This document shows positions 49,024 through 53,101 of a DNA stretch of 64,000 bases, piece after piece. Source of the DNA: Ostrea edulis (taxonomy: Eukaryota); contig NC_079165.1 in NCBI RefSeq assembly GCF_947568905.1, positions 3,720,001-3,784,000 on the forward strand, in the 5' to 3' direction. Below the pieces are notes generated by a model, which worked only from the letters and a program-made list of their open reading frames with translations, was not told where the DNA came from and did no database searches. Numbering within the stretch: the stretch's first letter is position 1; each line of letters starts with the position of its first letter. Made by a program: the position numbers and the translations under genes.

Positions 49024-49135
49024 TGTGGCGACGAGACCTGCTTGCTCACTGGTGGCCAGATACCTCAGTTGGTAGAGTACATGACTGAAGATTCAGGGGG
49101 CCCGGGTTCGAATCCCTGTCTGGTCAATTGCATTT
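49024..49135 (+). mobile_element. tRNA-containing LTR (solo, diverged), cut in its tail by a Helentron-type element
   Basis: tgtggcg..gtggccagatacctcagttggtagagtac..ggttcgaatccctgtctggtc..gcatttt, resuming as ctccc after 50587. Confidence 0.7.
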
Positions 49136-50122
49136 TTAGGTCACCTGAATTCATTCAGGTGACCTATTGCTATCTGTTTTTGTCCGTCGTCGTTCGTCGT
49201 GCGTTAACATTTGAACATTTTCAGCTTCTTCTCTGAAACCCCTGAACCAATTTCAACCAATTTTGGCATATAGCATCTGTGGGTGGAGGGGAACAAAAAT
49301 TGTGAAATTCGTGGTCCCTGCCCCCCTGGGGCCTGAGGGGTGGGGCAAAAACCATCCAAATGAGTGTAATTTTAAAAAATCTTCTTCTTTACTCCTGGAC
49401 ATCAAGAAGCCAAACTGTGGGCATAATTATAATGAGCGTTGAGCCCTCTACCAAAATTGTGAAATTCATGGCCCCTGGGGCAGGGGTTCTTGTGTTAGGG
49501 TGGGGCTCTATTGGTCATATAGTGAAAGTGTAGAAATTCTTTGAAAATCTTCTTCTCTGTCTCTGGGTATTAAGTAGACAAACTAATAGCATGGTAATGA
49601 TGAGCATGGATGCCTCTTTATACCCCCCGCAACAAGTTGTGGGGGGGTATACTGGAATCGGGTTGTCCGTCTGTAGACGCAATGGTTTCCGGGCTCTAAA
49701 GCATTATCCTTTCCACCTACCGTCACCATATCATATATATGGACTACCCATGGGATGAAGATGTTCCCTATCGATTTTGGGGTCAAAAGGTCAAGCGCAC
49801 TGGACATTGAAGTAGCAATATGGTTTCCGGGCTCTAAAGCGTTATCCTTTCCACCTACAGTCACCATATCATATATATGGACTACCCATGGGATGAAGAT
49901 GTTCCCTATCGATTTTGGGGTCAAAAGGTCAAAGGTCATGCGCACTGGACATCGAAGTAGCAACACTCAGAAAAGAGGTAGTTTATACCTATTACCAACA
50001 CCATTTGGGAGATTGGGGTAAGCGGGGGGTATTCTTAGTGAGCATTGCTTACAGTACCTCTTGTTAAAAATTGTGAAATTCATGGCCCCTGGATCAGGGG
50101 TTCTGGTGCTAGGGTGGGGCTC

Positions 50123-50172
<50 letters not shown>

Positions 50173-50587
50173 GTCCTTGGGTATTAAGTAGACAAACCAA
50201 TAGTATGATTATGATGAGCAAGGATGCCTCTTTCAAAATTGTGAAATTTATGGCCCCTGGGTCAGGGGTTCTGGTATTAGGGTGGGGCCCTATTGATCAT
50301 ATAGTGAAAATGCATTTTATTTCTTTGAAAATCTTCTCCTCTGCTGCTGGGTATTAAGTAGACAAACTAATAGTATGATAATGATGATCAAGGATGCTTC
50401 TTTCAAAACTGAAATTTATGGCCCCTGGGTCAGGGGTTCTGGTGCAAAGGCGGGGCTGACCACATAGCTATTCAATGTTTCTTCCATCCAAAAGTAAAAT
50501 TCTTATATTTAAACACAAACCTAATTCAAACATTGGAAGGTTGTTACATGATATTCAGGTGACCTATAAGGCCCCTGGGCCTCTTGT
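49136..50587 (+). mobile_element. Helentron-type element with a second one nested at 49618-50065
   Basis: Outer: tttttaggtcacctga..tcaggtgacc hairpin, ~155-bp internal repeats, end caggtgacctataaggcccctgggcctcttgt. Inner: tttataccccccgc..gggggggtata to cctcttgtt, inserted at TT. Confidence 0.85.
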
Positions 50588-50622: not shown

Positions 50623-50754
50623 TGCAATATAAGGAAAGAAGAAAATATAAGGCTGGACCAGGAATCAAACACTGGACCTGTGCATTACGAGCCAGGTGCG
50701 CTAACCACTGAGCTGTCCAGGTCAATATCTACGGTCCATGTAGGCGTAACTACA
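50623..50754 (-). mobile_element. tRNA-containing solo LTR of a second subfamily
   Basis: Reverse complement tgtagttacgcc..cctggacagctcagtggttagcgcacctggctcgtaatgcacaggtccagtgtttgattcctggtccagcc..attgca; about 132 bp, TG..CA. Confidence 0.6.
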
Positions 50755-50758
50755 ATAC

Positions 50759-50950
50759 TGGTGCCGTAGACAGAACTGTCGGGGATTAAAGATTCTGGGT
50801 AGACAATAAAGGAGGAAGGAATGTGGTGGTTTGACAGGTTCGATCACCGGTAGCTAGATAGCTCAGTTGGTAGAGCACCTGACTAGAGATTCAGGAGGCC
50901 AGGGTTCCAATCCCAGTCTAGTCCATTGCAATTTCTCCCTTCCTGTTACA
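50759..50950 (+). mobile_element. Partial tRNA-LTR TRIM: PBS, deleted interior, PPT and 3' LTR (50822-50950)
   Basis: tggtgccgtagac ... aaaggaggaaggaa|tgtggtgg..tagctcagttggtagagcacctgactagagattcagg..cctgttaca. Confidence 0.8.
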
Positions 50951-51188
50951 GATTAAATAACACAACCATGTAAAAATATTATAATCCTACCAACAAACAT
51001 GAATGTAAAACTGTAGTATTGTGACAGTCGGTCAAATTTGATTTCAGGTTTCATATAGCTCAGTAGCCCGAGCACCTGACAAGAGATTCTGGGGGGCCTG
51101 ATTTGAGTCCCAGAATTTCCAAACATTTTTCTTGTTCGAGTCGAGGAAAACAAATATGTAACTATAGAAAGATGAATGAACTATCTCT

Positions 51189-53101
51189 TTATTGCAGTGC
51201 ATACATGTAGACATCGTACAGCCCTTTGGGAAATCCTTTCTGTTTTTCACACTTGATAATTTCGAGTCCTGACTGGAGAATCACTTTGTCCAATTCCTCA
51301 CGTGTTCTGGTGTAGCTGCTGTCTAATTCGTCAAACTCCCTCTCCTCCCCTGAAATGTTTTCTTTCAAAATGATTATCCCATTTGTGGTCAATCCTGACT
51401 GACACCGCTTTAAAAAGTTGAGCAAGTGTTCATCAGTCAGGTGTCCTAGCACCCACTGGCACCAGATTACATCGTATGTACCAGCTTTCGCAATAAAATC
51501 CTGGAGACCTGAGCAGAACAGATTGTCAACACGAGATTCTTCTTCTCCGATAAAGGACCTGGCTTCATCCAGAAATTTCTGATTGAGTTCCACCATGTCA
51601 ACAGTTTTGAAAATTGGTAAAAGCAGTCTCTTTGTGATTCTCCCTATTCCAGCTCCACAGTCTAAAGCCCGGGTCATTTCAGTTTTTCCACCTCCAACCT
51701 TCAAAAGACAGAATCTTATTATTGATGTGCTTTATTGACAAATCATTGTCAAGTTTAAAATGCCAAGAGTAAAGAGACTCCCCCCCCCCCCCCCTCCCTG
51801 CAAAATGCAGTTTTATCTTAGTTCATCGACTATGAACAGGTTGGAAACTTTTCCCCTATAGCGAGATCTTCTCACTAATACGTTATTATCCCTCTTTAGC
51901 GAGAATATATATATATATATATGACCATAAACAGCTGTTTTATTGTTTCAATTAAAAATAATGACAAATATCGTGTGGCGGTCAGCCGGGTTTGATCGCC
52001 AGTGGCCGGATAGCTCAGTTGGTAGAGCACCTGACTAGAGATTCAGGGGGCCCGGGTTCGAATCCTGGTCTGGTCCGTTGCATTTTCTCCTTTCCTGATA
52101 CATTTGGTACCGTAGACCAGCCCCTGGAACTGATAGGTGAAAATGCCTGCCAGGGGATAAAGATCCTGGGTTGATGTCTTCAGGTGAGAAGACATTTAAG
52201 GAGGGAAGAATGTAGCGGTCAGCCGGGTTTGATCGCCAGTGGCCAGATAGCTCAGTTGGTAGAGCACATGACTAGAGATTCAGGAGGCCCCGGTTCAAAT
52301 CCCAGTCTGGTCCGTTGCATTTTCTCCCTTCCTGTTACACATGCAATGCTGAATTCAGAAAAAGTGTGACACGCACTCAAGACAACATGGCATGAAATCC
52401 CTCTATAGAATTGATAACACAGTAAAGAAATTTCACATTAATTTTGAGTACTTTTGTTTTGGTTTATATATTTGCAGAAGTATTATGGACATCTTAGCAC
52501 TTTTACTTGGCGTCAGGTCGATCCGTCTCACGGTCGGTTCGTTCCAAGATGGTCTGTCCCCTGGTCGATTCGGCCCATTTTGCTTAGTCGATCCGGACCT
52601 CCAAATTTTTTTTTATTAAAGATATAATAAATTATTAGGGGTCATCCATAATTGTCAACCATTTTCCAAAGTGTGCAAAAAGCACACTTTTTGAGACCCC
52701 CCCCCCCCCCCCCCCCCCCCTCAAAAAGTGTACATCAACCATTTTCAAATTCCCAACAAGAAGATCGACAATCAAATTTATGAGCAATTTAGTTCAAACA
52801 ATGAGTTCTTTAATATTGGTACCCCTATTTCTTGTTATATATGAATGATATAATGTTTTATAAACGTGCAAATCTTGTGTACGTAATAGATTGTTTTTAT
52901 AGAAAAAAATAAAGATGTCTCTGTCGTATCTTGTCGTCTTTTCAAGATAAAAAAAAAAACGAACTCCGCGGATACGAAATAAATCCGGAAGAGAAAAAAG
53001 AGCGTACGGTAAAATTGTCGATTTTTAATCCCCCTCCCCCCGAGCGTGCTTTTTGCACACTTTGGAAAATGGTTGACAATTATGGATGACCCCTTAATTA
53101 C

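What the first reader, a model, noticed from the sequence alone, without database searches (positions are those of the whole stretch)
51974..52339. Complete miniature LTR retrotransposon with a tRNA gene inside each LTR
Seen: 129-bp TG..CA LTRs, a 108-bp non-coding interior with two hairpins (cccctgg..ccagggg and atgtcttc..gaagacat), a PBS matching TGGTGCCGT (complementary to the 3' end of tRNA-His) and a 13-nt PPT. LTR1 holds a full cloverleaf with intact A and B boxes, and LTR2 a slightly diverged counterpart. Established: plant Cassandra TRIMs use 5S sequence in their LTRs as a Pol III promoter; from memory, tRNA-bearing animal equivalents have been named Ajax, so the class may not be new although this family may be. 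Inference: a Pol III-driven, SINE/LTR hybrid parasite of an autonomous His-primed LTR element; annotation pipelines would miscall it as tRNA pseudogenes.
Basis: partly seen in the sequence, partly recalled or inferred. Interest (0 to 1): 0.78.

Follow-up and report, generated by a model that had tools for sequence, protein, structure and literature searches.

The report
Old oyster Helenus tRNA-LTR mini-retrotransposon
This is a real but old and decayed copy of Helenus, a 366-bp non-coding LTR retrotransposon with a tRNA-like unit in each terminal repeat; the kind was described in oysters in 2024, so the find is ordinary, not new.

Summary
Window 51974-52339 is LTR(129)-internal(108)-LTR(129). 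It has TG..CA ends, a tRNA-like unit in each LTR, a tRNA-His-type PBS (one mismatch in this copy), two hairpins and a 13-nt polypurine tract.

The host genome looks like an oyster (10 large contigs, runs labelled "oyster metagenome"). The same unit is dispersed there at least hundreds of times. Ends are sharp and flanks unrelated. Of 26 insertions examined, 18 have a perfect 4-bp target-site duplication. Solo LTRs also carry them, and tandem arrays start and end with an LTR.

So it is a TRIM, not a satellite or a SINE dimer. The class is published: Kojima 2024 (PMC10886601) named tRNA-LTR TRIMs "Helenus". The window's 5' LTR is 91.5% identical, by eye, to Helenus-1_SaGl of Saccostrea glomerata.

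I added three things:
- Many copies carry the host tRNA-His 3' end copied exactly into the PBS.
- A coding His-primed Ty3/Gypsy family shares the LTR tips and polypurine tract.
- Two Helenus/Gypsy hybrid junctions tie that family to Helenus.

Pol III drive remains untested, and a TTTT run in each LTR complicates it. This scan already reported the same family on other DNA of this genome.

The parts
51974..52102 (+). 5' LTR, 129 bp, TGT...ACA
   Evidence: Direct repeat D1. Aligns end to end with the LTRs of dispersed copies, with unrelated flanks. 118 of 129 positions match the published Helenus-1_SaGl LTR, compared by eye.
52004..52076 (+). tRNA-like unit of the 5' LTR. Box A 52011-52022, box B 52055-52065, 8-nt anticodon loop.
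   Evidence: Rfam tRNA 55.2 bits, E 2.9e-10. ARAGORN gives tRNA-??? with a 4-base 'anticodon'.
52083..52086 (+). TTTT run, a possible Pol III terminator, 7 nt after the tRNA-like unit. Its twin is at 52320-52323.
   Evidence: Read. Present in all 48 LTRs of 24 copies. Absent from the published C. gigas relative Helenus-2C_CGi.
52103..52210 (+). Non-coding internal domain, 108 bp
   Evidence: Copies are on average 97% alike in pairwise comparison.
52105..52120 (+). Primer-binding site for tRNA-His. It starts 2 nt after the LTR and carries a G-to-A change in this copy.
   Evidence: Most copies read TGGTGCCGT then AGACCAG. The host tRNA-His-GTG genes end in the complementary sequence.
52121..52156 (+). 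Hairpin 1 (outer stem CCCCTGG/CCAGGGG, inner 5-bp stem)
   Evidence: Fold. Pairs are kept in 79-98% of 52 distinct copies.
52165..52173 (+). 9-nt box CCTGGGTTG, complementary to the variable loop and 5' T-stem of the host tRNA-His
   Evidence: It is the only 9-mer of the internal domain that matches the tRNA-His complement, at offset 23. A matching 12-mer is visible in published scallop and oyster His-primed families.
52174..52195 (+). Hairpin 2 (ATGTCTTC / GAAGACAT, 6-nt loop)
   Evidence: Fold. Pairs are kept in 86-98% of copies. The stem letters differ but stay complementary in the published related families (by eye).
52198..52210 (+). Polypurine tract, 13 nt, abutting the 3' LTR
   Evidence: Read. 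21 of 24 copies share one 15-nt PPT word. It is 15 of 16 identical to the PPT region of the coding Gypsy family.
52211..52339 (+). 3' LTR, 129 bp, 92.2% identical to the 5' LTR
52241..52313 (+). tRNA-like unit of the 3' LTR, more decayed
   Evidence: Rfam tRNA 39.9 bits; ARAGORN.

Best explanation
Window 51974-52339 is a dead copy of a Helenus-type TRIM. This is a non-coding LTR retrotransposon whose 129-bp LTRs consist of a ~30-nt leader, a tRNA-like unit with box A and box B, and a ~50-nt tail.

Shown here:
- The 366-bp unit is the mobile unit. It has sharp TG..CA ends, unrelated flanks and 4-bp target-site duplications.
- It leaves solo LTRs.
- It forms LTR-(internal-LTR)n arrays, which later grow by unequal exchange.
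- Reverse transcription is primed by host tRNA-His. Many copies carry the tRNA's exact 18-nt 3' end in place of the family's inherited, slightly different PBS. Some carry 32 nt of it.
- A coding His-primed Ty3/Gypsy family in the same genome has near-identical LTR tips and polypurine tract. It forms hybrid molecules with Helenus joined exactly at the PBS, so this family (or a close relative) supplies the reverse transcriptase and integrase.

Inferred, not shown:
- The box A/B unit acts as an internal Pol III promoter that makes the genomic RNA.
- If so, transcription would start near LTR position 27-31.
- It would have to read through the TTTT at LTR positions 110-113 of the 5' LTR and stop at the same run in the 3' LTR.
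- That gives U3 of about 30 nt, R of about 83 nt and U5 of 16 nt.

The window copy is older than the sampled family average and lacks a matching duplication. It has either lost a flank or arose by exchange between two copies.
For: Structure.

Family: 3165 first-look candidates in the genome, and the best 49 matches are nearly all full-length at 92-95% identity. Copies are LTR-INT-LTR with flank identity of 29%, which is random.

Target-site duplications: 16 of 26 independent insertions have a perfect 4-bp duplication at the BLAST-defined ends. This becomes 18 after correcting two ends where the alignment stopped 5 nt short. Five more match at 3 of 4. Chance expectation for a perfect match is 1 in 256.

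Solo LTRs: 6 of 20 randomly sampled LTR-end hits are full solo LTRs, 4 of them with perfect duplications.

Counts: genome-wide matches with at most 1 mismatch are 2177 for an LTR-end 23-mer and 413 for an internal 23-mer.

Arrays: they are flanked by one duplication (L014, tatg/tatg). In the 7-LTR array L017, five inner LTRs are 99-100% alike and the two outermost 96-99%.

Primer: host tRNA-His-GTG genes were found. Of 79 genomic sites with the perfect His PBS word, 29 directly follow a Helenus LTR.

Partner: a 1243-bp-LTR element with gag, protease, RT, RNase H and integrase in Ty3/Gypsy order. Its LTR start is 8 of 10 identical to Helenus, its LTR end 8 of 9, its PPT region 15 of 16, and its His PBS is perfect.

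Hybrids: L112 and L102.

Literature: Helenus definition, 4-bp duplications in animals, His-primed bivalve families, Gypsy partners proposed (PMC10886601). The Helenus-1_SaGl LTR is 129 bp and 91.5% identical by eye.
Against: - No transcript data for the host. The only RNA data are contigs from other oysters. They match just the tRNA-like core and belong to a different family.
- TTTT in the LTR should stop much of any Pol III transcription before the PBS.
- The window copy itself lacks a target-site duplication, has a mutated PBS, and has the lowest LTR identity of the 24 copies sampled (92.2% against a mean of 95.8%).
- The comparison with published consensus sequences was made by eye, not by a tool.
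Confidence: 0.9

Rival explanations
1. It is a Helenus TRIM, but the tRNA-like unit does not make the genomic RNA. Pol III stops at the TTTT in the 5' LTR and yields only a short tRNA-like RNA. The template for reverse transcription comes from Pol II read-through of host genes or from a weak LTR promoter.
For: TTTT lies 7 nt after the tRNA-like unit in all 48 LTRs sampled. In other oysters, related Helenus LTRs lie inside longer RNA contigs (up to 2.1 kb) in both orientations, as expected for passive co-transcription.
Against: Box A and box B are kept across families that otherwise diverged (PMC10886601). Four Ts is a leaky stop in many animals (my own knowledge). The C. gigas sister family lacks the T4 run. 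A 30-nt U3 leaves little room for a Pol II promoter.
Confidence: 0.3
2. The unit is a 237-bp tandem satellite derived from a tRNA-SINE, and the window holds 1.5 repeats of it.
For: Arrays with 237-bp spacing exist, on C8, C4 and C9.
Against: Most of the copies examined are exactly LTR-INT-LTR with unrelated flanks and 4-bp duplications. Arrays begin and end with an LTR (one sampled array, L021, begins with a different, truncated LTR) and share one duplication. Solo LTRs carry duplications. Inner array units are younger than outer ones.
Confidence: 0.02
3. It is two copies of a tRNA-derived SINE, mobilised by a LINE, that landed side by side.
For: The LTR contains a SINE-like tRNA head. Kojima proposes that Helenus arose when a SINE inserted into a TRIM LTR.
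Against: There is no A-rich or LINE-like tail. The duplication is a fixed 4 bp rather than variable in length. The ends are TG..CA. A PBS and PPT sit at the exact junctions. The same 108-bp spacer is present in every copy.
Confidence: 0.02
4. It is a pair of genuine tRNA genes or recent tRNA pseudogenes.
For: Rfam scores are above gathering and the cloverleaf is complete.
Against: The anticodon loop has 8 nt and no anticodon can be assigned. There are at least hundreds, probably thousands, of copies embedded in LTRs.
Confidence: 0.01

Closest known systems
Helenus-1_SaGl (Saccostrea glomerata) and Helenus-2C_CGi (Crassostrea gigas), Kojima 2024, PMC10886601
   Same: LTR length (129 and 128 bp), internal length (103 and 101 bp), 4-bp duplication, and the order tRNA-His PBS, hairpin 1, CCTGGGTTG-type box, hairpin 2, PPT. 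The window's 5' LTR matches Helenus-1_SaGl at 118 of 129 positions by eye. The tRNA-like core is identical to Helenus-2C_CGi over about 58 nt.
   Different: The host is a third oyster. The family-specific hairpin-2 words of both published families are absent from this genome at up to 2 mismatches. The internal domain is 108 bp. The PBS has an extra A after the ninth base. The hairpin-2 stem letters differ. Helenus-2C_CGi lacks the T4 run.
Cassandra (plant TRIM with 5S rRNA in the LTRs)
   Same: A TRIM with a small-RNA gene and internal Pol III promoter in each LTR. It forms long tandem arrays (PMC7215508).
   Different: 5S rather than tRNA, plants, longer (565-860 bp). Pol III transcription has been shown for Cassandra but not for Helenus.
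Ajax (nemertean TRIM)
   Same: An animal TRIM grouped with Helenus under 'TRIMp3'.
   Different: Ajax carries a 5S rRNA promoter fragment, makes 5-bp duplications, uses a tRNA-Leu PBS, and is known from two nemerteans only.
biv-TRIM (Satovic et al. 2019, PMC6934838)
   Same: A bivalve TRIM with solo repeats and tandem arrays.
   Different: biv-TRIM has no recognisable PBS and has a conserved TGATCCCAAAGGAC inner segment. That segment is absent from the whole window at up to 2 mismatches.
Ty3 bipartite primer-binding site (my own knowledge, not checked here)
   Same: A Ty3/Gypsy-type system in which a second stretch near the 3' end of the RNA pairs with the T arm of the primer tRNA. The Helenus box at 52165-52173 would pair with the variable loop and T-stem of tRNA-His.
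   Different: No functional evidence here. The box is no better conserved than the rest of the internal domain among diverged copies, and the candidate Gypsy partner lacks it.

Membership tests
Helenus (TRIM with tRNA-derived LTR sequence) | Short (<1 kb or so) non-coding element with two direct LTRs | tested here: met
   366 bp, with 129-bp LTRs 92% alike. The 108-bp interior is too short to encode a protein.
Helenus (TRIM with tRNA-derived LTR sequence) | tRNA-like sequence in the LTR, with box A (TRGCY..YGG) and box B (GGTTC) | tested here: met
   Rfam tRNA 55.2 and 39.9 bits. TAGCT..TGG at 52011-52022 and GGTTC at 52055-52059. Kept in most copies.
Helenus (TRIM with tRNA-derived LTR sequence) | PBS just downstream of the 5' LTR, complementary to a tRNA 3' end | tested here: met
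   The family PBS is complementary to the host tRNA-His 3' end for 9 nt, then for 6 more after a 1-nt bulge. The window copy has one mismatch. Perfect tRNA-templated PBS variants exist.
Helenus (TRIM with tRNA-derived LTR sequence) | Polypurine tract just upstream of the 3' LTR | tested here: met
   13 purines at 52198-52210. Conserved in 21 of 24 copies.
Helenus (TRIM with tRNA-derived LTR sequence) | 4-bp target-site duplication (animal Helenus) | tested here: met
   Met for the family: 18 of 26 perfect, and 4 of 6 solo LTRs. Not met for the window copy itself (atcg / catg).
Helenus (TRIM with tRNA-derived LTR sequence) | Sequence homology to a named family | tested here: met
   118 of 129 LTR positions match Helenus-1_SaGl, and the internal architecture is the same. 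Compared by eye against Data S1 of PMC10886601; no tool alignment was possible.
Helenus (TRIM with tRNA-derived LTR sequence) | Transcription by RNA polymerase III from the LTR (the proposed TRIMp3 property) | not testable with these tools
   No RNA run of the host held the stretch. Contigs of other oysters carry no start or end information.
Ajax | 5S rRNA-derived promoter in the LTR, with 5-bp duplication | tested here: not met
   Rfam finds tRNA and no 5S in the window. Duplications are 4 bp.
biv-TRIM | Conserved TGATCCCAAAGGAC inner segment and no canonical PBS | tested here: not met
   The segment is absent at up to 2 mismatches. A canonical PBS is present.
Tandem satellite | Copies occur only in head-to-tail arrays, without insertion signatures | tested here: not met
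   Dispersed single units with duplications, and solo LTRs.

The most novel reading that the evidence does not exclude
The internal domain of His-primed bivalve Helenus carries a second stretch complementary to tRNA-His (window 52165-52173, pairing with the variable loop and 5' T-stem).

Two readings are open. The whole internal domain may have been born from a 32-nt read-through copy of the primer placed next to a PPT; locus L102 shows such a structure forming today. Alternatively, the box may act as a Ty3-like second primer contact.

Either reading would give a concrete origin or mechanism for this TRIM lineage that the 2024 description does not mention in the sections I read or searched.
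Probability: 0.3. Interest if true: 0.45.

Novelty: new member of a known kind. Interest (0 to 1): 0.2.

Why it matters
It matters little for biology at large. The class (Helenus, 'TRIMp3') and its oyster lineage were published in 2024, and this scan had already met the family elsewhere in this genome.

It has practical value for annotation. Every tRNA call in this 64-kb window is a Helenus LTR, so tRNA counts in oyster genomes will be inflated unless these elements are masked.

For transposon specialists, three additions are modestly useful:
- tRNA-templated PBS copies, as direct evidence of His priming.
- Matching LTR tips and PPT with one coding Gypsy family.
- Two hybrid junctions.

Which autonomous element moves a TRIM is rarely known, and the 2024 paper offered only PBS similarity.

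Tried and rejected
- **Satellite, SINE-dimer and true-tRNA readings.** Rejected on junction structure, duplications and the 8-nt anticodon loop.
- **RNA evidence.** No RNA run of the host held the stretch. Four RNA runs of other oysters gave contigs that match only the tRNA-like core. Their unaligned ends read as the C. gigas family Helenus-2C_CGi. This says nothing about Pol III or about this family.
- **Covariation in the two hairpins among 52 copies in this genome.** Almost all change is decay, with only one pair showing a double change in 3 copies. There is no within-genome support for or against the structure.
- **Extra conservation of the CCTGGGTTG box among 22 diverged copies.** None found (0.83 against 0.82 overall).
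- **Second His-primed coding family (L043/L088).** Its reverse transcriptase region is split into separate frames. It was not compared further.

Full report
**1. What is in the window**

Bases 51974-52102 and 52211-52339 are a 129-nt direct repeat, 92% identical, 237 bp start to start. Each copy starts TGT and ends ACA.

Each repeat holds a 73-nt tRNA-like unit, at 52004-52076 and 52241-52313. Rfam's tRNA model scores them 55.2 and 39.9 bits against a gathering score of 29. ARAGORN also calls them, but with an 8-nt anticodon loop and no assignable anticodon.

Between the repeats lie 108 bases:
- a TT spacer;
- a PBS-like word at 52105-52120;
- a hairpin at 52121-52156;
- a 9-nt box at 52165-52173;
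- a second hairpin at 52174-52195;
- 13 purines at 52198-52210 that abut the second repeat.

MFE is -36.2 kcal/mol, z = -2.97, and no shuffle out of 200 folds as well. This copy reads TGGTACCGT, not TGGTGCCGT.

**2. Is it a mobile unit or a satellite?**

A search of the host genome (895 Mb, ten large contigs) gave 3165 first-look candidates. The best 49 matches were nearly all full-length, at 92-95% identity.

In 30 loci with 1.5-kb flanks, most copies are exactly LTR-internal-LTR. Flank identity between copies is 29%, which is random, so the ends are sharp.

Of 26 independent insertions, 16 show a perfect 4-bp target-site duplication at the BLAST-defined ends. Two more do once ends that BLAST cut 5 nt short are read through. 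Five match at 3 of 4. Chance would give a perfect match 1 time in 256.

Arrays such as L014 (4 LTRs) and L017 (7 LTRs) begin and end with an LTR and carry a single duplication (L014 perfect, L017 3 of 4). In L017, five inner LTRs are 99-100% alike while the two outermost are 96-99% alike to the rest. The array therefore grew by unequal exchange after one insertion.

I took a sample of 20 exact LTR-end hits on contig 1. Six were full solo LTRs: four with perfect duplications and two at 3 of 4. Two were arrays, and the rest were complete or partial elements.

Genome-wide, an LTR-end 23-mer matches 2177 times and an internal 23-mer 413 times, at up to 1 mismatch. All of this is the signature of an LTR retrotransposon. 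It contradicts the satellite and SINE-dimer readings.

**3. Age of this copy**

Across 24 canonical copies, the two LTRs of one element are on average 95.8% alike. LTRs of different elements are 95.1% alike. The sampled copies therefore date from an old burst.

The window copy is the most decayed of the 24:
- its LTRs are 92.2% alike;
- its PBS is mutated;
- box B of the 3' LTR is altered;
- its flanks (atcg / catg) do not match.

It has lost a flank, or it arose by exchange between two copies.

**4. What is known**

Kojima 2024 (PMC10886601) named TRIMs with a tRNA-derived sequence in the LTR "Helenus".

Animal Helenus makes 4-bp duplications. Fifty-one families were found in pteriomorph bivalves, including three oysters. 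Some use tRNA-His, and Gypsy elements were proposed as partners on the basis of PBS similarity.

Data S1 of that paper gives Helenus-1_SaGl from Saccostrea glomerata, with an LTR of 129 bp, an interior of 103 bp and a 4-bp duplication. Read by eye in blocks of ten, its LTR differs from window 51974-52102 at 11 of 129 positions without gaps (91.5%). Its interior has the same order of parts.

Helenus-2C_CGi from C. gigas is the same lineage. The family-specific hairpin-2 words of both published families are absent from this genome at up to 2 mismatches. The host is therefore a third oyster and this family an unlisted orthologue. Public runs holding the stretch are labelled with a coded organism or "oyster metagenome".

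biv-TRIM (PMC6934838) is a different element. Its conserved inner word is absent from the window.

**5. Primer**

The genome has tRNA-His-GTG genes. One is L064:1446-1517. The family PBS pairs with the tRNA's 3' end for 9 nt and, after a 1-nt bulge, for 6 more.

Stronger evidence comes from the exact 16-nt word expected if the PBS were copied from the tRNA itself. It occurs 79 times in the genome and 0 times in the reversed control. I fetched all 79 sites.
- 29 follow a Helenus LTR directly.
- 7 of those run on into a Helenus interior.
- 20 run into unrelated DNA.

Since plus-strand strong-stop DNA copies the first 18 nt of the primer (established retroviral mechanism), these copies are direct footprints of tRNA-His priming. 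Several sites extend to about 32 nt of tRNA complement (L036, L057, L102, L103, L132).

**6. Autonomous partner**

I observed only. I built no consensus and propose no repair.

Among the same 79 sites, five follow the LTR of one coding family. One copy has 1243-bp LTRs and open frames with protease, RT, RNase H and integrase domains in Ty3/Gypsy order.

Compared with the Helenus family, its LTR begins with 8 of 10 identical bases and ends with 8 of 9. Its PPT region is 15 of 16 identical, and its PBS is the perfect His word.

Two hybrid loci join the two elements:
- **L112:** a full Helenus LTR, the TT spacer and the perfect PBS run straight into this Gypsy's interior, at 100% identity over 269 nt.
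- **L102:** the Gypsy LTR end is followed by a 32-nt copy of the tRNA-His 3' end, then the Gypsy PPT, then a Helenus LTR and interior.

Joins exactly at the PBS are what a strand transfer between two cDNAs in one particle would give. That is inference. The far ends could not be fetched.

An earlier report of this scan on another piece of the genome (s1-311832) also mentions two hybrid insertions. I looked for hybrids after reading it, and found these through the PBS word.

**7. Pol III**

Box A and box B are intact in most copies. However, a TTTT run lies 7 nt after the tRNA-like unit in all 48 LTRs sampled.

A Pol III genomic RNA would have to read through it in the 5' LTR and stop at it in the 3' LTR. 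That would give U3 of about 30 nt, R of about 83 nt and U5 of 16 nt. This is possible if four Ts are leaky. The C. gigas sister family lacks the run.

No data here test this. The only RNA material was contigs from other oysters. They match the tRNA-like core only, belong to Helenus-2C_CGi, and lie in both orientations inside longer contigs. I put Pol III drive of the genomic RNA at roughly even odds, and the TRIM/Helenus identity at 0.9.

**8. A side observation**

The box CCTGGGTTG at 52165-52173 is the only 9-mer of the interior, outside this copy's mutated PBS, that matches the complement of the host tRNA-His. It matches at the variable loop and 5' T-stem.

Published His-primed scallop and oyster families read GAACCTGGGTTG or near it at the same place (by eye). 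L102 shows how a 32-nt primer copy can come to sit next to a PPT. That suggests the interior began this way, or that the box is a second primer contact as in Ty3 (my own knowledge).

Among 22 diverged copies in this genome the box is no better kept than the rest of the interior, and the Gypsy partner lacks it. It remains a lead.

**9. Verdict**

This is a real feature, correctly read as a tRNA-bearing TRIM. The class and lineage are already published, and this copy is dead. Low interest.

Noticed in passing
window 50758-50950: A second, older Helenus remnant: an interior lacking its first bases, then a PPT and a 3' LTR about 84% like the studied LTR. Its tRNA-like unit is at 50852-50924 (Rfam 47 bits).
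   Followed up: partly
window ~50625-50757 (minus strand): Read in reverse, this is an LTR of another Helenus type, resembling the published Helenus-2_CGi LTR by eye. It abuts the remnant above head to head.
   Followed up: no
window 49025-49137: The first ~113 nt of a Helenus-1-like LTR (tRNA call 49054-49126, 42.7 bits). It is cut off by another insertion that starts with a 10-nt palindromic end and carries tandem units of about 180 bp (about 49140-50560).
   Followed up: no
window 51040-51120: A degenerate tRNA-like fragment, 76% like the LTR core (repeat family D2).
   Followed up: no
window 52637-53094: A 52-nt inverted repeat, 98% complementary, with 354 nt between the arms. It looks like a MITE. 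Long C-runs lie near it and at 51777-51795.
   Followed up: no
L051 (G000:C2, around 48372730): Two Helenus LTRs separated only by TT, the 18-nt tRNA-His copy and AA. This is an element with almost no interior.
   Followed up: partly
L031 (G000:C1, around 3536577): A Helenus LTR plus an 18-nt primer copy plus 13 nt, flanked by a 10-bp direct repeat (gtattctttg). This looks like capture of a strong-stop DNA rather than an integrase event.
   Followed up: no
Published Data S1 of PMC10886601: Hairpin 2, just before the PPT, has different stem letters in different bivalve Helenus families but stays complementary, with a purine-rich loop. Seen by eye only. It is not mentioned in the sections of the paper that I read or searched.
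   Followed up: partly
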